From positions 248,001 through 312,000 of IMG/VR virus record IMGVR_UViG_3300031576_000001: a stretch of DNA of 64,000 bases; one strand, given 5' to 3'. Positions within the stretch are counted from its first letter, which is position 1. Each line of letters begins with the position of its first letter. The position numbers and the translations under genes are program-made. This document shows positions 14,346 through 62,940 of the stretch, piece by piece. The notes under the pieces were generated by a model. That model did not search any database. It had not been told where the DNA came from and worked only from the letters and a program-made list of their open reading frames with translations.

Positions 14346-14817
14346 GAGCCCAACAGAGTCAGTCATAAAGCACCCTACCAATAGGCAGGCAAAAGAGCTT
14401 CTTAGCGGGGCTACCGTCACCACGGTCAGCGGCACGAACCCCCTCACCTTGACGCTATCGAGGGGAGGTCTGAGTTACAGTGTCACGGTAGGCAACCTGA
14501 CCAACCTGAGCAAGCTGAAGAGTACGCCGGACCCAGAGAGGGTTTTTTATGCCTCTCTGGGCTTCTTGTTGACCAGTAGCAGCCTACACGCGGTTCTGAC
14601 CGAGCCTGAGAGCGTGTTGGTCTTCGTGGTGTCTGCGACGCACTTTGGGTGGAAAGACAAGGCCAGCGGGCGAGCCTGGCTTATCAAGGCAGAAAGGTGT
14701 GGTCAGTGGTGGAAGCTGACCAGAACAGCCCCGGGGCGCAAGGTACTAAAGCAGGCGCTACGCCAGGGGGAGGGGTGGGAAGCCTTCTTGAAGGCGCACC
14801 AGCCTGAAAAGGTGTAA
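14344..14817 (+). CDS. Hypothetical protein
   Basis: ORF; start uncertain. Confidence 0.45.
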   Translation: MSPTESVIKHPTNRQAKELLSGATVTTVSGTNPLTLTLSRGGLSYSVTVGNLTNLSKLKSTPDPERVFYASLGFLLTSSSLHAVLTEPESVLVFVVSATHFGWKDKASGRAWLIKAERCGQWWKLTRTAPGRKVLKQALRQGEGWEAFLKAHQPEKV

Positions 14818-44977: not shown

Positions 44978-45415
44978 TCACTCCCCTCTCAGGTAACGCT
45001 CCAACCAAGCCCCCCGAAAGAGGTTCAGCGAGGCGCAAACCTGCAAACCCATGACTTCGGAGGGGAAAAACCACCCCGACCCCATGCTGGCGGTCAGATT
45101 CAGTTTCACAAACGGGGTGAGTCCTGTAACCCCGTAGTGCCGTATCCGGCAAGCCCGCCCAACGGTCGGTGGCACGAGATTGTGCTCCAAGAGGGGCTTT
45201 GGGTTGACTCCACCGTCCAGGGGGGACCAACCTAGCTCCTCAGTCAACTCACGCTTTAGTGCGGTGTAGTCGTCCTCACCGGGCTCAACCTTGCCGCCAG
45301 GGCACTCCCACTTACCCCCCAGTCGGTCGTCGGAGGGTCGCCTCTGCGTCAAGAAGATACGACCCCCCCAGGAGAGGATGGCACACACCACGTTGATGAC
45401 CGGTCGGTTCGTCAC
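44978..45415 (-). CDS. Nudix hydrolase (MutT-like)
   Basis: GKWECPGGKVEPGE....ALKRELTEELG Nudix box. Confidence 0.9.
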   Translation of the reverse strand: MTNRPVINVVCAILSWGGRIFLTQRRPSDDRLGGKWECPGGKVEPGEDDYTALKRELTEELGWSPLDGGVNPKPLLEHNLVPPTVGRACRIRHYGVTGLTPFVKLNLTASMGSGWFFPSEVMGLQVCASLNLFRGAWLERYLRGE

Positions 45416-56338: not shown

Positions 56339-56752
56339 ATGAAAGAGATCGCAATTTCCCTGTCGCGCGCCGAGCTACTCGCCGCGAAAGCCTGCTCGGC
56401 GGGCATGACGTGGTTCGATACGTGGCCCCGCCTCTACGACGGTGACCAAGAGATTGTCGTGCTGTGGTCGCCCCTGGCGATGGTGTGGTCCTTGGCGAAC
56501 CCGAATAGCAACCAGCGCAGCATGGCCCGTTGGCTTATCGACAACGGGCTACTGCCCATGTGGTCGCTGAGCGGAGCCTACTTGAGCGGAGCCTACTTGA
56601 GCGGAGCCTACTTGAGCGGAGCCGACTTGAGCGGAGCCTACTTGAGCAGAGCCGACTTGAGCAGAGCCGACTTGAGCGGAGCCTACTACCCCGGGGGCGC
56701 CTTGCCGGGGGGGTGGGTGCGCAATAAGGACGGTTTCCTTGTTAGGGGCTAG
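56339..56752 (+). CDS. Pentapeptide repeat protein
   Basis: (A[YD]LS[GR])n; 15-bp DNA repeats at about 56568-56686. Confidence 0.85.
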   Translation: MKEIAISLSRAELLAAKACSAGMTWFDTWPRLYDGDQEIVVLWSPLAMVWSLANPNSNQRSMARWLIDNGLLPMWSLSGAYLSGAYLSGAYLSGADLSGAYLSRADLSRADLSGAYYPGGALPGGWVRNKDGFLVRG

Positions 56753-56776: not shown

Positions 56777-57199
56777 ATGCTGAAGACACTTGACGAGCTA
56801 GACAAAGAGGCTACAGAGGCGGGCGTGTCTGTCCCTGTGTGGATGCGTAACGCGGTAGCCAAGAACCCAGAGTATGTTTTCTGGGGTCCAGACCAGGATT
56901 ATATGTGGAAAGCGGGCACCGGGTGGGAGGCTCCGCTAGCCTTTGCCTCTTGGGGTGACTGCAACCTCGTGCTTGATGACTTGAACGAGGTTGTACACTT
57001 CTACTTCGGGGTCAACGGCGATGACCCGGAGAGGGTGACCTTGACGTTGACCTTCTGGCTACTACACCCCCGCCAGAGCGCCTCTCGGGGGGTCCGTATT
57101 CACCGGGTAGCTCAGGCTGACTTGAGAAATGTCTACCGGTTCCTTCGTCGTGCTGCCACGCGCAACGCTCAGAGGTTTGCCAAGGTGCCTCGTCGGTGA
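56777..57199 (+). CDS. Hypothetical protein
   Basis: GGGAG RBS. Confidence 0.6.
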   Translation: MLKTLDELDKEATEAGVSVPVWMRNAVAKNPEYVFWGPDQDYMWKAGTGWEAPLAFASWGDCNLVLDDLNEVVHFYFGVNGDDPERVTLTLTFWLLHPRQSASRGVRIHRVAQADLRNVYRFLRRAATRNAQRFAKVPRR

Positions 57200-57585
57200 T
57201 TGTTCTCGACGATGCTGAGCCTGCGGTATTGGGTGAGCCTGTCCAGGCTTACAGGAATCTCTCTGTGCGAGAGGGGCGGCTCTACTCGGTACGGCTCAGG
57301 GGACGGTTAATCGCCAGGGTACAAGACCTTTGGTTGTACGATGTTACTTTTCGTGTGCGACCTGGGGGTCGCAGGCGTGCTTTGCGAGAGGGTGTGCGCA
57401 ACGTACACGCCTTTGTCTCTGGCACAGCGGTCTCTCTCATGCCTAGAGGGCTACTGTGGCAGAGAGCCAGCTACAACCCCTTTCTCACTGACCGGGCTGG
57501 CTTTTTTCTGGTGGAGTCGGGTCAGGAGGTGTCTGCGGCACGCTATGCGCGTTTGGACCAGGAGGGGTGCTTTGTGGTGCTGTAG
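57196..57585 (+). CDS. Phage hypothetical protein (NVHAFV motif); carries an internal TTA at 57307
   Basis: YRNL, YSV, RNVHAFV and YNPF motifs. Confidence 0.6.
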   Translation: MIVLDDAEPAVLGEPVQAYRNLSVREGRLYSVRLRGRLIARVQDLWLYDVTFRVRPGGRRRALREGVRNVHAFVSGTAVSLMPRGLLWQRASYNPFLTDRAGFFLVESGQEVSAARYARLDQEGCFVVL

Positions 57586-57943
57586 CTTTGCGCTTGTGGG
57601 TGGGGCAGTTTGGGTGATAGTGCCCCACCTGTCCGCAGCTACGGCACTCTTTCTTGCGGGCAGAGCCACCAGCTAGCAACGTGTTGACAGCTTCTTCGCT
57701 CCACAGGGAAGTCACCTTACGCCTAGAGTCAGCGTTGAACAACTTGAGGTAGGCAACGACCAGCTTAACCGTGTCAAGCCAGTAAGGGTCTTCTGCCCTC
57801 AAAGCCCGCACAGCGTCGTCAATCTCGCCCAGGGGGAGCGTCGTCCAGGCTTCGGTGGCTATAGGCTGGTTGTAACGACTGAGGAGGAGGATCGCGGTAA
57901 GCCGCTCAGAGAGGGTGGGAGGGGTGGTACTCGTGTTGGGCAT
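57485..57943 (-). CDS. Hypothetical protein with CCHC zinc knuckle
   Basis: CRSCGQVGHYHPNCP. Confidence 0.5.
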   Translation of the reverse strand: MPNTSTTPPTLSERLTAILLLSRYNQPIATEAWTTLPLGEIDDAVRALRAEDPYWLDTVKLVVAYLKLFNADSRRKVTSLWSEEAVNTLLAGGSARKKECRSCGQVGHYHPNCPTHKRKATAPQSTPPGPNAHSVPQTPPDPTPPEKSQPGQ

Positions 57944-58233
57944 GGGGCTAGGCGTAGGTGTCTAAGCTCCTTGACACGGCTGTCAAAGACCAGAGCCGTC
58001 AACTGGTTACCCAGGTCGGGCTCGCAGAAGTTAGCGGTCGCCTTGGGGAGCAGCGCGTAGAGCGCCCCTTCGTTGTCCACCTAGAGGAAGACCAGCGTGT
58101 TGCCACCCTCGTACCAAAGGCGAGCTTTCTCCGGGTTACGCATGACAAACTCTACCAGGGCGTGCATCCCCTGGACAGCCTGAGCGCCAGGGGAGAGGTC
58201 GCTACGTGTCACGATGTAAAGTTTCTGTGTCAT
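57898..58233 (-). CDS. Peptidyl-tRNA hydrolase, Pth2-like, with in-frame TAG at codon 51 (58083-58081); not in the ORF track as a whole
   Basis: MTQKLYIVTRSDLSPGAQAVQGMHA...W..GGNTLVFL*VDNEGAL...FCEPDLGNQLTAL; first downstream TTA at 57900-57898. Confidence 0.75.
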
Positions 58234-58444
58234 GGTTTTCTTGGTCTCCTATCACCCCGAGTGGGGTACTACACAGGACACCCACGTCTCCCAAGGCTTT
58301 CTTTGCCTTGTCTGCTACCTCGGGCACCCACGTTGCGAAGATGAGGTAGCCCTCGTTGTCGTTGGACTCTACCCACACGGTTCTGTGCCCAGCACGGATA
58401 GCGCGTGTAATTGCCTCGCGGGCTACTTCTTGGATGGTTGGCAT
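58202..58444 (-). CDS. Hypothetical protein
   Basis: AAGGA RBS. Confidence 0.45.
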   Translation of the reverse strand: MPTIQEVAREAITRAIRAGHRTVWVESNDNEGYLIFATWVPEVADKAKKALGDVGVLCSTPLGVIGDQENHDTETLHRDT

Positions 58445-58454
58445 GGTTTCCTTG

Positions 58455-59663
58455 TTAGAAGCGAATGCGCCAGCTTACGGTGATGCTTCGTATCGTGCGC
58501 TGCCAGGTGTGTTCCCGGGTTACACGTCGCGTGTAAAAGGAGTCCTCTGACACCCCTGTAGCCCTCGCGTGACTCTCTATGAAAGCCAACTCACCCACGG
58601 TCATGTCGTCTACGTCCTTGTTGAAGTAGGTGCAGTGCTCCGTGGTGGTGCCAACACTGGCGGTGCTGTCCGGGTTCCACCCAAGGAACTCCTCGTCGGT
58701 ACGGTCCGGTTGCCCTGGCCGAGGGAAGGGCTTGACCAGGCTGTAGAACACGGTTTCCAGAGGGAGCCCCCAGTGCGCGCCCGTGACCGCCAGTGTCAAC
58801 TTGTCCGGGGAGACGTGTAGTTCATGCCAGCGAAAAGCAGTGCTCTCTTCGCTACCCTGGAAAGAAAAGTCCGCCCGCCGCCCCGTGTCAAGCTCGATGA
58901 CGGTGCAACCCTGGGTGCGCTCTGCGCAGAGTAGGTAGTCGTGCCCGTTGGGGTGCGCTATCACCCATGCGAAGGGGAAGTCAGTGTGTTGCCTCCTGAC
59001 CTCGCACCAAAGCCCTTCAACCTGACCGTGACGGTAGCAGGGGGTTTTGCTGTCTGCGTCGAGCACCTTGGTAATGGTCAGCGTGTAGGTGCGCCCGTCA
59101 GCTCGCGGGGGACTAACGTGCCTCTCTACCTCCCCGTGGTTCTCTTTGGCAAAGAGGGTGTCAGCATGAAACCCTTCCAAAGCCTTCTGTACTTGCGTGT
59201 CCAGCTTGGCTACAGCTTGTCTACGCAAGCCAGGCGAGAGGCTACGTAGCTCCGGGTAGAGCCTCTTGGCTTCGCCGTAGGGAGTCTTGTTGCGGTGCTG
59301 AGTCAGGACTCGCCAGGGCTCATCCGACGTGGGGTCGAGAGCCTTCTCCAACCCAGGGATACACAAGCTGCGTAGCACGTCGATCTGGCTTACAGAGAGG
59401 TTTCGTCCGTGCTGATACTTCGGCTCTTGCCGCCAGAGGGGGCGCCCACGAAGGATGCTATAGGCTACCAATAGCGCCCTTGTCTGTACCCCGAGGTACT
59501 TGCGCTGGGCTTGTAGCTTGCACCGCTCTTGTCCGGTAGCTGCCCCACCCTCTTTGAGCTTCTGTATCTCAGCGGAGAGGGCTCTACTCCTAGCTTCCCT
59601 GACCTTGATCTGCTCTTTGATAAGAGCCCGCAAGGCGAGCTTGTCTGCGTCGTGGTCTTCCAT
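58455..59663 (-). CDS. Hypothetical protein
   Basis: N-terminal R..LVAYSILRGRP..QE motif; 402 aa. Confidence 0.65.
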   Translation of the reverse strand: MEDHDADKLALRALIKEQIKVREARSRALSAEIQKLKEGGAATGQERCKLQAQRKYLGVQTRALLVAYSILRGRPLWRQEPKYQHGRNLSVSQIDVLRSLCIPGLEKALDPTSDEPWRVLTQHRNKTPYGEAKRLYPELRSLSPGLRRQAVAKLDTQVQKALEGFHADTLFAKENHGEVERHVSPPRADGRTYTLTITKVLDADSKTPCYRHGQVEGLWCEVRRQHTDFPFAWVIAHPNGHDYLLCAERTQGCTVIELDTGRRADFSFQGSEESTAFRWHELHVSPDKLTLAVTGAHWGLPLETVFYSLVKPFPRPGQPDRTDEEFLGWNPDSTASVGTTTEHCTYFNKDVDDMTVGELAFIESHARATGVSEDSFYTRRVTREHTWQRTIRSITVSWRIRF

Positions 59664-59804
59664 GGTAACAATCTCTCGTGTTTGGGTGCCTGGCGGAAGG
59701 GGTACACCGAGAGAGCCACGGGGAGGACCACGCTTGCGGGGGAGCTAGAAGAAGGCTTTCATGGTGAGCGTAGGGTAACCAGGGTTAGAGGTTGGTACAA
59801 GGGG

Positions 59805-59877
59805 TGCGCCCTGCGGGAGTTGAACCCGCGCAAAAGAACTTTAGAGGCTCTGTACTCTACCTTTGAGTTAAAGGCGC
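59805..59877 (-). tRNA. tRNA with CUA anticodon (amber suppressor type)
   Basis: GCGCCTT-TA-ACTC AAAGGTA GAGT-AC-AGAGC CTCTAAA GTTCT-TTTGC-GCGGG TTCAACT CCCGC-AGGGCGC-A. All four stems pair; loop is CU-CUA-AA; no encoded CCA. Confidence 0.8.
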
Positions 59878-59923
59878 GTTGTGTGGGCTTCTGCTCGATC
59901 TCACGAGGTAGCCCGTTGTGAAG

Positions 59924-60367
59924 TCAGTCTTCCGAGAGGCGGTCAGGGCGCCTGTGGTCCTGGCGAGCCTTCCCGCCGCCCCCGCTGCGCTTACCCTTCC
60001 CACCACCGCCGCCTCCACGGTCACCGCCGCCCCCGCCGCCAAAGTCACGGCGAGGGGGTGGGCGAGGGTTGGCAGCGCGGCGGGCGGTCTCGGTCTCGGA
60101 GATCCACTGGTCCGCCTGGGTGATGAGGTCGGCGGCGCGGTAGAGGTCCGTCCTGACGATGCCATCCTCGAAGAAGGCGCGCACGTTGAGGTAGGGGGCA
60201 CCGGTACCGTCCTTGCGTGTCCGACCGACCGAGACGGAGTACAGAACCCCCCTGTCCGTGGTGGCCGTCTTGACGGTACAGATGACCTCACCATCGGTAA
60301 AGGTCTGGGCTACCTCCCAAACGAGGGGAGGGCGGGAGGGATCGGCAGAAGAGGCGTAGTCGCTCAT
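59924..60367 (-). CDS. Hypothetical protein with Gly/Arg-rich tail (possibly RNA-binding)
   Basis: GGGGDRGGGG/KR-rich C-terminus. Confidence 0.55.
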   Translation of the reverse strand: MSDYASSADPSRPPLVWEVAQTFTDGEVICTVKTATTDRGVLYSVSVGRTRKDGTGAPYLNVRAFFEDGIVRTDLYRAADLITQADQWISETETARRAANPRPPPRRDFGGGGGGDRGGGGGGKGKRSGGGGKARQDHRRPDRLSED

Positions 60368-60414
60368 GGCTTTGTCTTGGTTCTCTCTCAAAAGGCGTTA
60401 TACACCGGCAAGGG

Positions 60415-61329
60415 TAAGCTGTCGGCAAGCGTAAGCAGTTGGTGGTTCAAGGCGATCAAGGCGTCGCGGTCTTCTAGAGGCTCCAAGAGGGTGCTGTCTA
60501 CGCCCTCCAAGCCGTAGAACGCCCCGAGGAGAGCCCCGACCATGCTAGCAATGGTGTCAGTATCACCCCCTCTACGGATGGCTAGCTCGATACCCTCCTT
60601 AAAGGAGGTAGCTACCGCGGCCAGCGCAAAGACAACCGCCACGTCTGCTGTGACCCCTCTAGGTGGGAGAGCCTTGAGGTACCCCGCCAGGGAGTGCCTG
60701 GGCAAGGGCTGAGGGAAGTTCTCAAAAATGTCGTGTAGTTTCCCGGCTGGCAGCATGGTAGCCACCTTCTTAGCCAGGTAGGTAGGTGTGGTTACCTGTA
60801 GGGCTAGTAGACCCACCCCAAGAGCGATAGCCATGCTGCCGTGCCTTGCCTCGGGGGACTGGTGGGTCAACGAAGCGTCCACGTCGGCGTATCGCGCGGC
60901 TAGGTCCAGGTCATGCCGGAAAGCCAGCCCGATGGGCGATACCCTCATGGCGGTACCGTTGCCCTGTGAGCCAGCGACCCCACAGGTTGTCGGGCTCTTG
61001 GTGCGTAGGTACTTCAAGATAGCCTCACGCACGGTGTTCCCCATCCCCCTGCACGAACCGGACTGAAACCACTTGTAGTAGCTCTCCATGACGGCGCTGG
61101 GGTTGAACGTCTTCTCTTGGACGAGGGACTTGGCAAGCGCCACGGTCATCTGGGTGTCGTCCGTGACCTGACCTGGCTCAATCATGAGCCAATTGTTGCG
61201 CGTGGGTAGGTAGGAGTGCCCATCCCAGTCAAGCAAGAGGGGGCTGAGGCTCATCCTCCCCTCGAAAGGTGCGCCCAGTGCGTCCCCTACGGCAACCCCG
61301 ACGAGCGGGGCAGGCGTGCGGTCTTTCAC
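60415..61329 (-). CDS. ADP-ribosylglycohydrolase (ARH/DraG family); ends at TTA 60417-60415
   Basis: GDALGAP.E, TDDT, GNG.AMR..P, TH and GGDTDT. Confidence 0.92.
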
Positions 61330-62352: not shown

Positions 62353-62519
62353 AGTCTGTACCCCCCGTGTCTGCCCGCGAGCAAGAGCTTATCGAGGCGT
62401 TGACCCAGATCACGCAAGACCTGGAGGAAGAGGTAGCGGAATGTGTTACGCTAGCCAAGAGACGTAGTGGTCAGTGGCCCGCCCCTCCCAAGCGTGAACG
62501 TCGTGACACCCTCCCTTGA
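62349..62519 (+). CDS. Small hypothetical protein
   Basis: GTGA coupling. Confidence 0.4.
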   Translation: MKSVPPVSAREQELIEALTQITQDLEEEVAECVTLAKRRSGQWPAPPKRERRDTLP

Positions 62520-62940
62520 CGTGTCCGTGATACTGCCCCCCTTTCTCTGGCAAGGGGGTTGCCCACCCCCAGGGGACACGTTGGCACGCCAGGGTTGGAA
62601 GTCTCTGGTTCTCTGCGCGGAGGAATGGACCAATGCCGGGCTGTACCAGGACATCGAGGTACTCTGCGCGCCTAACCAGGACAACGGGCTTCTCACTCAG
62701 AAACAATGGGAACGTGCTCGGTCAGCGGCGCGCTGGGTAGCCAGGCGTATCGAGCAAAACCAGAAGGTACTGGTGACGTGCATGGCAGGGCTAAACCGCT
62801 CTGGGCTAGTCACGGCGCTGGTTCTGCATGAGCGTATGGGCTGGTGCGGCGCTCGTTGTGTGAGTCACGTAAAGCAGGCGCGCGATGAGTTTGCCTTGAC
62901 CAACCCTGCCTTTGTCAACGCCCTTCTTAGCTTGAAGTGA
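62467..62940 (+). CDS. Dual-specificity/protein-tyrosine phosphatase family (start uncertain)
   Basis: VLVTCMAGLNRSG (CX5R) and N..F. Confidence 0.85.
   Translation: MVSGPPLPSVNVVTPSLDVSVILPPFLWQGGCPPPGDTLARQGWKSLVLCAEEWTNAGLYQDIEVLCAPNQDNGLLTQKQWERARSAARWVARRIEQNQKVLVTCMAGLNRSGLVTALVLHERMGWCGARCVSHVKQARDEFALTNPAFVNALLSLK

What the first reader, a model, noticed from the sequence alone, without database searches (positions are those of the whole stretch)
57898..58233. Hidden Pth2-like peptidyl-tRNA hydrolase with an in-frame amber codon near an amber-suppressor tRNA
Seen: both halves of a Pth2-like protein are in one frame, separated only by TAG, about 1.6 kb downstream of the tRNA(CUA) on the same strand. 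Inference: expression may be gated by the phage suppressor tRNA. Pth activity could release chains that drop off at unassigned UUA codons, tying suppressor, Pth2 and TTA stops into one translation-control system. A simple GAG-to-TAG pseudogenisation is the alternative.
Basis: partly seen in the sequence, partly recalled or inferred. Interest (0 to 1): 0.78.

Follow-up and report, generated by a model that had tools for sequence, protein, structure and literature searches.

The report
Amber-gated tRNA hydrolase beside suppressor tRNA
A jumbo phage from a cave metagenome carries a Pth2-type peptidyl-tRNA hydrolase gene that can be read in full only if the phage's own amber-suppressor tRNA decodes an in-frame TAG, and the same pairing of an interrupted hydrolase gene with a matching suppressor tRNA recurs in dozens of unrelated standard-code phages.

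Summary
On the minus strand, ATG 58233 opens a Pth2-family ORF. It is broken only by TAG at 58083-58081 (codon 51) and ends at TAG 57861-57859. A canonical tRNA(CUA) lies 1,570 nt upstream on the same strand.

The genome is a 322.6-kb, 39-tRNA phage contig that uses the standard code. This is its only gene with an internal stop.

No relative has a stop at this column; most have Ser. However, 42 of 83 distinct relatives carry an in-frame TAG elsewhere in the same ORF:
- Usually it sits in a mini-leader: ATG, 0-7 further sense codons, TAG, then the domain with no start codon of its own.
- Three other lineages have internal TAGs.
- 35 of the 42 have a tRNA(CUA) within about 4 kb.
- One lineage has a TGA leader and a tRNA(UCA).
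- The flanking genes use the standard code.

Suppressor-dependent expression is therefore a family trait, and the window's TAG is most likely a variant of that gate (about 0.7). A recent nonsense mutation (about 0.2) cannot be excluded, because no close relative or raw read is available.

The hydrolase's substrate and the purpose of the circuit are inferred, not shown. I found no description of this module in the searchable literature.

The parts
58084..58233 (-). Pth2-like ORF, codons 1-50 (ATG to the codon before the in-frame TAG)
   Evidence: Pfam PTH2 15.1 bits, phrog_1866 E 1e-9, family HMM 67.5 bits.
58081..58083 (-). In-frame amber codon (codon 51), followed by G
   Evidence: It is the only gene-internal stop in the genome. 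It aligns with a variable, mostly Ser column, near the end of strand 2 in the model of a relative.
57946..58080 (-). Second half of the Pth2-like domain, in the same frame. It keeps the family-invariant E-P-D and T.
   Evidence: tblastn runs across the TAG. HMM alignment reaches profile position 104 of 110. Coding score for the 30 codons after the TAG is 16.3, 13.5 above the next frame.
57859..57945 (-). C-terminal tail outside the family domain, plus the true stop TAG at 57861-57859. It overlaps the next gene's start (ATG 57943) by 85 nt.
   Evidence: Tails of similar length occur in L003 and L005.
58246..58249 (-). GGAG, a Shine-Dalgarno-like motif 12 nt before the ATG
   Evidence: Read directly.
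58249..58254 (-). In-frame TGA TAG, 8 codons upstream of the conserved K-L-Y. The TAG lies where sisters L003 and L010 also have one, and may be a relic of the family's leader TAG.
   Evidence: Interpretation only.
59803..59877 (-). tRNA with anticodon CUA (amber suppressor). It has a 7-nt anticodon loop CUCUAAA, discriminator A, G1-C72, a short variable loop and no encoded CCA.
   Evidence: ARAGORN and Rfam tRNA 55.5 bits. It is the only tRNA outside the 38-gene cluster at genome 21-31 kb and has no close paralogue.
58202..59663 (-). Two co-directional ORFs of unknown function (402 aa and 80 aa) between the tRNA and the Pth2-like gene. The 80-aa ORF overlaps the Pth2-like start by 32 nt.
   Evidence: No Pfam or PHROG family. 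No terminator-like site between the tRNA and the gene.

Best explanation
The ORF at 58233-57859 (minus strand) encodes a phage-type Pth2-fold hydrolase. Its full-length translation requires the phage's own tRNA(CUA) (59877-59803) to decode the UAG at codon 51. Without the charged suppressor, only a 50-residue fragment is made.

This is the window's version of a conserved two-part phage module: a Pth2-like gene interrupted by an in-frame stop, plus the cognate suppressor tRNA on the same strand nearby. In most relatives the gate is a mini-leader: an SD motif, ATG, 0-7 further sense codons, TAG, then the domain with no start codon of its own.

Shown:
- the anatomy;
- the recurrence of the gate across relatives;
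- the match between stop codon and anticodon;
- the standard code of the surrounding genes.

Inferred:
- that the tRNA is charged and reads the codon;
- that the protein hydrolyses peptidyl- or aminoacyl-tRNA;
- that the coupling makes hydrolase output proportional to suppressor activity. This could recycle drop-off products of read-through (feed-forward damage control), or it could discharge the suppressor itself (negative feedback that caps read-through, in the logic of prfB).
For: 1. In this genome:
- It is the only gene-internal stop in 322.6 kb, and it is a TAG.
- The lone extra tRNA is CUA, on the same strand, with no terminator-like site between it and the gene.
- The genome uses the standard code: coding density is 0.901, against 0.909 if TAG is read as sense and 0.904 for TGA. 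TAG ends 94 of 346 ORFs.

2. The downstream half looks translated:
- Its coding score is 16.3, against a genome mean of 8.7 +/- 5.2.
- Both lineage-specific indels are in frame (6 and 3 codons).
- E-P-D, T and the other family-invariant residues are all kept, despite about 58-67% divergence from the sister sequences in that half.

3. Among 83 distinct domain sequences from 94 loci:
- In-frame TAG with tRNA(CUA): 35.
- In-frame TAG with tRNA(UUA): 1.
- In-frame TAG with no suppressor found: 6, of which three have short flanks.
- TGA leader with tRNA(UCA): 2.
- No in-frame stop: 39.
- The leader stop is TAG in 39 of 39 distinct TAG-leader sequences, never TAA, even in phages with 24-35% GC.
- The codon after the TAG is ATT, GTT, GTA, ATC, AAC, GAA and similar, which are not start codons.
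- The next base is a purine in 37 of 39, against 32 of 73 for ordinary terminal TAGs in this genome.
- An SD-like motif lies 3-11 nt before the leader ATG in 25 of 39.

4. Internal TAGs like this one also occur in L057 (own ATG, position 34, CUA 183 nt downstream), L072 (position 33, CUA at +69) and L037/L038 (leader plus position 25). All are at variable columns.

5. The flanks use the standard code. With the Pth2-like gene masked, the median density gain is 0.039 for TAG as sense, against 0.034 for TGA and 0.036 for TAA. Only the Lak phages are recoded.

6. The cultured Tenacibaculum phage pT24 uses the standard code, has 3 tRNAs of which one is CUA, has no mid-gene TAG elsewhere, and its Pth2-like gene begins ATG AAA TAG.

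7. The family has the Pth2 fold: Pfam 30-40 bits, PDB Pth2 E 2e-11, and an AF2 model with pLDDT 97 and TM 0.76-0.83 to 2zv3, 3erj and 1q7s.
Against: - No relative has a stop at this exact column, and the two sister sequences start with their own ATG. One of them (L003) has no suppressor in 8 kb. The window's TAG is therefore lineage-specific and cannot be dated.
- The nearest relative is only 54% identical.
- The C-terminal half has evolved 2.5-3.4 times faster in this lineage than in its sisters, while the N-terminal half has not. It also carries two deletions. This could mean relaxed constraint.
- The tRNA lies upstream, 1.57 kb away, rather than just downstream as in most relatives.
- TAG-terminated genes of this genome show no back-up stops: the median extension is 17 codons, against 16-17.5 for the other stops (p 0.85). 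There is thus no sign that strong suppression has shaped the genome.
- The statistical association is not phylogenetically controlled. Naive Fisher gives odds ratio 19 and p 9e-5, but only 3 independent pairs lie on supported branches.
- The canonical Pth2 GKGK lysine and DAGxT motif are replaced by PG and EPD, so the chemistry and substrate are unproven.
- There is no expression, proteomic or raw-read evidence.
Confidence: 0.7

Rival explanations
1. This is a recent nonsense mutation, probably TCG (Ser) to TAG. The gene is a young pseudogene in this metagenome-assembled phage, and the tRNA(CUA) is kept for some other purpose.
For: - The TAG position is unique among 83 relatives, and the column is mostly Ser (TCN), one step from TAG.
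- The sister clade starts at its own ATG, and L003 lacks a suppressor.
- The C-terminal half has a long branch and two deletions.
- The Logan contigs would hide a minor sense allele.
Against: - It would be a coincidence that the single broken gene out of about 340 is the one family that habitually carries in-frame TAGs, that the stop is TAG, and that it is followed by a purine.
- There are no frameshifts and no second stop.
- All invariant residues are kept, and codon usage downstream is very strong.
- With an intact tRNA(CUA) expressed in the same cell, the codon would be partly read through anyway.
Confidence: 0.2
2. The TAG is a sequencing or assembly error.
For: Depth is only about 12x, from a single sample.
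Against: Two independent assemblies of the run agree over 2.6 kb with no difference. A substitution error fixed in the consensus at 12x is unlikely.
Confidence: 0.03
3. The phage reassigns TAG genome-wide or in a late-gene block (code 15-like recoding), and this gene is just one of many recoded genes.
For: A suppressor tRNA(CUA) is present. Recoded phages such as Lak also carry a Pth2-like gene.
Against: - Coding density is 0.901 with the standard code and gains no more from TAG-as-sense than from TGA-as-sense.
- 94 of 346 ORFs end in TAG.
- No other gene is interrupted.
Confidence: 0.02
4. One reading: suppressor tRNA, Pth2 and unassigned UUA ('TTA stop') codons form one translation-control circuit. 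In it, Pth2 releases chains that drop off at UUA.
For: The phage has no tRNA-Leu(UAA) among its 39 tRNAs. TTA is six-fold rarer in frame than out of frame: 0.13% against 0.74%.
Against: - TTA occurs 117 times in 95 of 304 predicted genes and 61 times in 108 long ORFs, whose coding signal continues past it.
- The Pth2-like frame runs through the TTA at 57898.
- The module occurs in phages of 24-66% GC, where TTA is common.
Confidence: 0.03

Closest known systems
Stop-codon recoding in phages with phage-encoded suppressor tRNAs (Borges et al., bioRxiv 10.1101/2021.08.26.457843; Peters et al., PMC9523058)
   Same: A phage suppressor tRNA(CUA) is needed to read in-frame TAGs in phage genes. Recoding is proposed as a way to make expression depend on phage-made translation components.
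   Different: In that case, tens to hundreds of genes (structural and lysis) are recoded, in low-GC phages that have nearly abandoned TAG as a stop. Here a single gene is interrupted in otherwise standard-code genomes of 24-66% GC that still end many genes with TAG (27% in this genome). That gene is itself a tRNA-directed hydrolase next to the tRNA. The preprint does not mention a hydrolase.
prfB (RF2) autoregulation through an in-frame UGA (established textbook case, recalled from memory)
   Same: A translation factor's own ORF holds an in-frame stop, so its synthesis reports on how that stop is being decoded.
   Different: prfB uses a +1 frameshift and needs no tRNA partner, and its feedback is proven. 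Here the event is read-through by a dedicated tRNA, and both the sign and the existence of feedback are unknown.
Mycobacterium cluster C phages (Bixzunavirus such as Alice gp150; Myrnavirus Phabba gp89), annotated 'peptidyl tRNA hydrolase' next to 'tRNA-suppressor (cta)'
   Same: Same protein family (37-47% identity), with a tRNA(CUA) 130-280 nt downstream on the same strand.
   Different: There the TAG sits immediately before the annotated GTG start (ATG TAG GTG and GTG TAG GTG), and SD spacing favours the GTG. The ORF is therefore probably not gated. I found no statement linking the two genes in the searchable literature.
Jumbo phages XacN1 and Atu_ph07 (PMC5852040, PMC6102473)
   Same: These are standard-code jumbo phages reported to carry suppressor tRNAs and Pth genes. 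The XacN1 authors looked for targets of the CUA tRNAs.
   Different: They read through 18 annotated terminal amber codons and found no target. In XacN1 the family domain is fused, ungated, behind an HD-like domain (ORF364). They did not consider a leader gate.
Archaeal and eukaryotic Pth2 (PF01981; PDB 2zv3, 3erj, 1wn2, 1q7s, 1xty)
   Same: Same fold (TM 0.76-0.83) and a significant profile match.
   Different: The phage family lacks two residues of the GKGK loop and has an invariant E-P-D where Pth2 has D-A-G-x-T, with a loop 4 residues shorter. Activity is untested.
Lambda bar minigenes and Pth (recalled from memory; not checked here)
   Same: A 2-8 codon mini-ORF ending in a stop is tied to peptidyl-tRNA hydrolase biology.
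   Different: bar minigenes poison Pth-deficient hosts through peptidyl-tRNA drop-off. Here the mini-ORF is in frame with the hydrolase gene and abuts it, and it always ends in the stop that the neighbouring tRNA reads.

Membership tests
Pfam PTH2 (PF01981) / Pth2 fold | Scores above the Pfam gathering cut-off (23 bits) | tested here: inconclusive
   The window's N piece scores 15.1 bits and the C piece gives no hit. The tools do not accept the joined product. Five intact relatives score 30.8-40.1 bits. The X-joined product scores 98 bits against the HMM built from those relatives.
Pfam PTH2 (PF01981) / Pth2 fold | Pth2 three-dimensional fold | tested here: met
   Tested on a relative, not on the window's own protein. 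The AF2 model of L012 has pLDDT 97.4. Its top Foldseek hits are all Pth2 structures, TM 0.76-0.83, probability 1.0.
Pfam PTH2 (PF01981) / Pth2 fold | Canonical catalytic motifs: the Lys of the GKGK loop, and the Asp and Thr of DAGxT (residue roles recalled from memory of S. solfataricus Pth2 work) | tested here: not met
   The profile alignment to 2zv3 shows a 2-residue deletion at GKGK. Invariant E-P-D-x-G sits opposite D-A-G-H-T, with a loop 4 residues shorter. The conserved Q and H of the AQxxHA helix are kept.
Pfam PTH2 (PF01981) / Pth2 fold | Hydrolysis of peptidyl-tRNA | not testable with these tools
   Needs an enzyme assay.
Stop-gated Pth2-like gene plus cognate suppressor tRNA module (defined in this report) | In-frame stop that must be read through to make the domain | tested here: met
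   TAG at codon 51. In relatives: leader TAG in 39 distinct sequences, internal TAG in L037/38, L057 and L072, TGA leader in L067/68.
Stop-gated Pth2-like gene plus cognate suppressor tRNA module (defined in this report) | Suppressor tRNA with the matching anticodon within a few kb, same strand | tested here: met
   tRNA(CUA) 1,570 nt upstream on the same strand. In relatives, 35 of 42 TAG-gated loci have CUA and 2 of 2 TGA-gated loci have UCA, the latter on the opposite strand.
Stop-gated Pth2-like gene plus cognate suppressor tRNA module (defined in this report) | The rest of the genome uses the standard code | tested here: met
   for this genome, for relatives' flanks, for pT24.
Stop-gated Pth2-like gene plus cognate suppressor tRNA module (defined in this report) | Gate in a mini-leader before a domain that lacks its own start | tested here: not met
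   The window's gene has its own SD and ATG, and the gate is internal. L057 and L072 have the same variant.
Stop-codon-recoded (code 15) phage | Low coding density under the standard code, restored by reading TAG as sense; many genes with in-frame TAG | tested here: not met
   Density 0.901 against 0.909, and only one interrupted gene. The positive control Lak goes from 0.47-0.58 to 0.87-0.88.
Pseudogene | Further disabling lesions, loss of conserved residues, decay of codon usage | tested here: inconclusive
   None of these is present. However, the C-half branch is 2.5-3.4 times longer than in the sisters, and a very recent lesion would leave no other trace.
prfB-like autoregulatory recoding | The gene product acts on the decoding event that its own synthesis depends on | not testable with these tools
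   Suggested only by the pairing of a tRNA-ester hydrolase fold with its gate and tRNA.

The most novel reading that the evidence does not exclude
The Pth2-like protein and the suppressor tRNA form a self-contained homeostat. The hydrolase discharges the suppressor tRNA, or recycles it from peptidyl form. Because the hydrolase is made only by read-through of the stop that this tRNA reads, the pair sets a fixed, moderate level of stop-codon read-through in an otherwise standard-code phage. This would be a previously undescribed class of translational control module. It would also give the first identified client for the puzzling suppressor tRNAs of standard-code jumbo phages.
Probability: 0.3. 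Interest if true: 0.9.

Novelty: new variant of a known kind. Interest (0 to 1): 0.8.

Why it matters
Many standard-code phages, especially jumbo phages, carry stop-codon suppressor tRNAs whose targets have never been found. The XacN1 authors searched explicitly and found none.

This work points to a specific, recurrent client: a Pth2-fold hydrolase gene next to the tRNA, whose ORF is interrupted by exactly the stop the tRNA reads.

The consequences are practical:
- A long-standing puzzle becomes a testable two-gene circuit.
- A cultured system is available for testing it (Tenacibaculum phage pT24).
- Gene callers systematically mis-start or miss these genes. pT24's annotation begins at an internal ATG that cuts off the conserved N-terminus.
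- The module offers a possible first step on the path from 'suppressor acquired' to full stop-codon reassignment.
- Natural matched pairs of suppressor tRNA and gated ORF may also be useful parts for genetic-code engineering.

Tried and rejected
- Genome-wide or block-wise TAG recoding: rejected on coding density and the census of interrupted genes.
- Assembler artefact: unlikely, because the Logan contigs are identical. Raw reads are not held, so allele frequencies could not be read.
- Close relatives of this phage: none found.
  - blastn against GenBank phages: no match.
  - The JGI metagenome scan returned only the source contig at more than 71% identity.
  - The search for homologous proteins with the C piece found nothing.
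  - The GTDB genome scan with L012 found nothing.
- Back-up stops after TAG-terminated genes, as a footprint of suppression: no signal.
- Identity of the tRNA(CUA): no paralogue above 65% identity among the phage's 38 other tRNAs. The suppressors of different loci are not one sequence lineage and have different discriminator bases. The inserted amino acid therefore remains unknown.
- Termination-reinitiation at the codon after the leader TAG: rejected. That codon is ATT, GTT, GTA, ATC, AAC, GAA, ACT, AGA, CAC or CTA. The SD is spaced for the upstream ATG, and the stop is always TAG.
- A +1 frameshift fusing the upstream HD-like ORF to the Pth2-like ORF: considered because the HD ORF ends inside the leader in one subgroup. 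Rejected because the position of its stop is not conserved, and most gated loci have no HD gene upstream.
- L088's 'internal TAG' was dropped, because that copy is frameshifted.
- A phylogenetically controlled association test was underpowered, with only 3 supported independent pairs.
- The literature search found no prior description. It covers only open-access PMC and bioRxiv.
Full report
WHAT IS THERE

The window is bases 248001-312000 of a single 322,633-bp contig, Ga0247727_10000022, from a cave metagenome. The contig has 58.6% GC and 39 tRNA genes. Thirty-eight sit in one cluster at 21-31 kb. The other has anticodon CUA and lies in the window at 59803-59877 on the minus strand. This is a jumbo-phage-type genome.

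On the same strand, an ORF starts at ATG 58233, with GGAG 12 nt upstream. It runs for 50 codons and meets TAG at 58083-58081. It then continues in the same frame to TAG 57861-57859. The finding's lower coordinate (57898) is a TTA codon inside this frame, not its end.

The tRNA's 3' end is 1,570 nt upstream of the ATG. Two ORFs of unknown function lie between them, and there is no terminator-like site.

BOTH HALVES ARE ONE PTH2-LIKE DOMAIN

- The N piece alone is sub-threshold in Pfam (PTH2 15.1 bits against a cut-off of 23), and the C piece gives nothing.
- Intact relatives pass the cut-off at 30.8-40.1 bits.
- A relative's protein aligns by tblastn straight across the TAG: 110 aa, 52% identity, E 7e-26.
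- An HMM of 19 relatives aligns the X-joined product over profile positions 2-104 of 110, at 98 bits. The N piece alone scores 67.5 bits.
- The family profile hits solved archaeal and human Pth2 structures (E 2e-11).
- An AlphaFold model of a relative (pLDDT 97.4) superposes on them with TM 0.76-0.83.

The family is divergent. It lacks two residues of the canonical GKGK loop. It has an invariant E-P-D where Pth2 has D-A-G-x-T. 'Peptidyl-tRNA hydrolase' is therefore an inference from fold, not a demonstrated activity.

THE GENOME IS NOT RECODED, AND THE STOP IS NOT AN ASSEMBLY ARTEFACT

Coding density is 0.901 under the standard code. It is 0.909 if TAG is read as sense and 0.904 if TGA is. TAG ends 94 of 346 ORFs.

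I ran a codon-usage-based census of every stop that has 30 open, best-frame coding codons on both sides. It gave 16 sites. Nearly all of the other 15 have an in-frame ATG a few codons after the stop, which marks adjacent genes in the same frame. Three have none (TAA at window 14815, TGA at 44978, TGA at genome 12112); I read these too as adjacent genes with non-ATG starts and did not follow them up. The Pth2-like TAG is the only clear gene-internal stop.

Logan's independent contigs of the source run match 57400-60000 exactly, at about 12x. Raw reads are not held, so minor alleles cannot be seen.

TTA codons are rare: 0.13% in frame against 0.74% out of frame. The phage also lacks a tRNA-Leu(UAA). 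But TTA occurs in 95 of 304 predicted genes, so TTA is not a stop.

RELATIVES: NO STOP AT THIS POSITION, BUT A STOP IN THE SAME GENE

I collected 94 loci with 83 distinct domain sequences. They came from GenBank phages, IMG/VR and JGI metagenomes. I located the domain in each with a family HMM.

At the column aligned with the window's TAG there are 13 different residues, with Ser in 41 of 83. Sister L003 has TCT and L010 has GCA. The exact position is therefore not conserved, and a TCG-to-TAG change is the simplest origin.

The region upstream of the conserved K-L-Y-x-x-T-R start changes the picture.
- In 39 distinct sequences the domain has no start codon of its own. Instead there is an ATG, then 0-7 further sense codons (mostly 1-2), then TAG, and the domain follows 1-15 codons later.
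- Typical leaders are ATG AGT CTA TAG ATT, ATG TGT CTA TAG GTT, ATG ACG TAG ATT and ATG AAG TAG ATT.
- The stop is TAG in all 39, never TAA, including in phages of 24-35% GC, where TAA dominates.
- The codon after it is not a start codon: ATT, GTT, GTA, ATC, ATA, AAC, GAA, ACT, AGA, CAC or CTA.
- The next base is a purine in 37 of 39. For ordinary terminal TAGs in the window's genome the figure is 32 of 73.
- An SD-like motif lies 3-11 nt before the leader ATG in 25 of 39. Most of the rest are AT-rich genomes.

Three further lineages carry internal in-frame TAGs like the window's.
- L057 is a 133-kb contig. The gene has its own ATG, the TAG is at domain position 34, and a tRNA(CUA) lies 183 nt downstream.
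- L072 is a 441-kb contig. The TAG is at position 33, and the CUA tRNA lies 69 nt downstream.
- L037/L038 are 392- and 216-kb contigs. They have a leader TAG plus a second TAG at a Q/E column, with the CUA tRNA 21 nt downstream.
All of these TAGs sit at variable columns.

THE SUPPRESSOR tRNA TRAVELS WITH THE GATE

The 83 sequences cross-tabulate as follows:

| In-frame stop | Suppressor tRNA in the held flank | Count |
|---|---|---|
| TAG | CUA | 35 |
| TAG | UUA | 1 |
| TAG | none | 6 (three of these flanks are shorter than 1.5 kb) |
| TGA leader | UCA | 2 (L067/L068) |
| none | CUA | 15 |
| none | UUA | 6 |
| none | none | 18 |

- The TGA-leader pair (L067/L068) shows covariation between stop codon and anticodon, though from one lineage only.
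- Several of the 'none / none' loci have odd tRNAs beside the gene instead. These have an AAU anticodon, or 8-nt anticodon loops containing UUCA or CUCUAA.
- In many loci the suppressor is the only tRNA in the flank.
- In all but L067/L068 the suppressor is on the gene's strand. It is usually 4-2,000 nt downstream and sometimes upstream, as in the window.
- The suppressor tRNAs are not one sequence lineage.

The surrounding genes use the standard code. With the Pth2-like gene masked, the median coding-density gain is 0.039 for TAG as sense, against 0.034 for TGA and 0.036 for TAA. Only the Lak megaphages, my positive control, are clearly recoded.

The cultured Tenacibaculum phage pT24 gives an independent check:
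- It uses the standard code (density 0.914 against 0.896 with TAG as sense).
- It has only three tRNAs, one of them CUA.
- No other gene is interrupted in mid-ORF.
- Its Pth2-like gene begins ATG AAA TAG.
- Its annotation starts at an internal ATG that removes the conserved N-terminus.

A naive Fisher test on the first 43 sequences gives an odds ratio of 19 and p of 9e-5. The tree is poorly resolved, however, and only three supported independent contrasts exist. The association therefore rests on breadth (GC from 24 to 66%, many contig families) and on the codon-anticodon match, not on a formal phylogenetic test.

WHAT THIS MEANS FOR THE WINDOW'S GENE

The window's protein groups with L003 and L010 (SH-aLRT 97). 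In that clade the gene starts at its own ATG, and a TAG lies 6-8 codons upstream of K-L-Y. In the window this TAG is preceded by TGA, so it cannot be read into. It looks like a relic of the leader.

The working gate in the window is therefore the internal TAG.

For function:
- It is the only interrupted gene in the genome.
- The stop is the one the lone extra tRNA reads.
- The stop is followed by a purine.
- It lies at a variable surface position (model).
- The 30 codons after it have one of the strongest coding scores in the genome: 16.3, against a mean of 8.7 with SD 5.2.
- Both lineage-specific indels are in frame.
- Every family-invariant residue of the downstream half is kept, although 58-67% of that half differs from the sister sequences.

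Against function:
- The downstream half has evolved 2.5-3.4 times faster than in the sisters, while the upstream half has not.
- The position is unique.
- With the nearest relative at 54% identity, a recent lesion cannot be excluded.

I put suppressor-dependent expression at about 0.7 and a young pseudogene at about 0.2.

HOW IT LIKELY WORKS

Shown: the anatomy and its recurrence.

Inferred: the tRNA(CUA) is transcribed with or near the gene, processed and charged by a host synthetase. It then competes with RF1 at the UAG. Only then is the Pth2-fold protein completed.

The output of the hydrolase therefore tracks suppressor activity. Two readings fit.
- Feed-forward damage control: the hydrolase recycles peptidyl-tRNAs generated by read-through or by the suppressor itself.
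- Negative feedback: the hydrolase discharges the suppressor and so caps read-through.
The second reading would explain how phages that still end many genes in TAG tolerate a suppressor. This genome shows no back-up stops after TAG. I cannot tell the two readings apart with these tools.

A conserved partner gives a further lead. An HD-like domain of unknown function (phrog_14850) is fused to the Pth2-like domain in either order in XacN1, Xoo-sp13, L086 and pT24. It is encoded immediately upstream in about 20 gated loci. It is absent from the window's genome.

COMPARISON WITH WHAT IS KNOWN

The closest known phenomenon is stop-codon recoding in phages with suppressor tRNAs (bioRxiv 10.1101/2021.08.26.457843; PMC9523058). 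That involves many late genes in low-GC genomes that have largely given up the recoded stop, and no hydrolase is mentioned.

The XacN1 and Atu_ph07 papers list suppressor tRNAs and Pth genes side by side without linking them. The XacN1 authors found no target for their CUA tRNAs.

Mycobacterium cluster C phages have the same gene next to a tRNA(CUA). Their TAG, however, lies just before the GTG start and is probably not part of the ORF.

The logic resembles prfB autoregulation (recalled from memory), but it works through read-through with a dedicated tRNA.

I found no description of a stop-gated Pth2-like gene paired with its suppressor. This statement is limited to open-access PMC and bioRxiv.

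The family itself is large: 1,771 clusters at E below 1e-10 among 1.8 billion representatives.

VERDICT

- The gating idea is supported by comparative evidence, as a family trait.
- The TTA link is not supported.
- The module is a new variant of suppressor-dependent expression, and it is worth experimental follow-up.

Noticed in passing
L022:9461-10000 (XacN1 ORF364), L025:10331-10897 (pT24), L032:3430-3993 and about 20 other loci: An HD-like domain of unknown function (phrog_14850; Pfam HD sub-threshold at 19.7 bits) is a conserved partner of the Pth2-like domain. It is fused N-terminally in XacN1, Xoo-sp13 and L086, and C-terminally in pT24 (43% identity between the two, E 1e-42). In many gated loci it is a separate gene whose 3' end overlaps the amber leader. 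It is absent from the window's genome.
   Followed up: partly
L067:3950-4010 and L068 (IMG/VR contigs 3300033121_001601 and 3300020577_008610): Here the leader stop before the start-less Pth2-like domain is TGA (ATG plus six codons, then TGA ATT). The only suppressor-type tRNA in the flank has anticodon UCA, lying 2.3-2.9 kb away on the other strand.
   Followed up: partly
L005:3775-3996, L017:2810-2978, L014:2280-2356, L054:3778-3854; L040, L041, L093-L096, L099, L102, L103; L049:4328-4401: Ungated family members often sit beside unusual tRNAs. Some are called tRNA(AAU) and have a mismatched closing pair. Others have 8-nt anticodon loops (GGGU, GGUC, loops containing UUCA, or CCUCUAAC) and may be opal, amber or quadruplet decoders.
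   Followed up: no
L023 and L024 (Prevotella phages Lak-A1 and Lak-B4): In these TAG-recoded megaphages the Pth2-like gene has no leader stop. The only tRNA within 10 kb has anticodon UUA (ochre type) and lies about 600-700 nt upstream on the same strand.
   Followed up: no
whole genome (G000) and window: TTA is the rarest Leu codon: 117 in 304 predicted genes, six-fold depleted in frame relative to out of frame. CTA, by contrast, is common (about 1,400). The phage's 39 tRNAs include Leu GAG, UAG, CAG and CAA but not UAA, and also lack Trp and Cys.
   Followed up: partly
window 60388-61329 (-), 62467-62940 (+), 56339-56752 (+), 57196-57585 (+): Neighbouring genes are an ADP-ribosylglycohydrolase (205 bits), a dual-specificity-phosphatase-like protein (a homologue also lies next to the Pth2-like gene in L006's 324-kb contig), a pentapeptide-repeat protein, and a mycobacteriophage L5 gp82-like protein. 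The region may be an accessory or counter-defence region.
   Followed up: no
window 57859-57943 and 58202-58233: The Pth2-like ORF overlaps the next gene (152 aa, weak CCHC zinc knuckle) by 85 nt at its 3' end. The upstream 80-aa ORF overlaps it by 32 nt at its 5' end. These overlaps are unusually long for a phage.
   Followed up: no
window 14815-14817 (+, TAA) and 44978-44980 (-, TGA): In the in-frame-stop census, these two stops have a coding signal on both sides and no ATG shortly after. They are probably adjacent genes with GTG or TTG starts, but I did not check.
   Followed up: no
L088:4001-4260: One relative (193-kb IMG/VR contig) has the amber leader, but its domain is frameshifted after position 73. 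It is a truly broken copy and useful as a contrast.
   Followed up: partly
L002:1471-1479 (Alice) and L028:9974-9982 (Phabba): In mycobacteriophages of two genera a TAG sits directly before the annotated GTG start of the Pth gene (ATG TAG GTG and GTG TAG GTG). It may be a remnant of the leader gate.
   Followed up: partly
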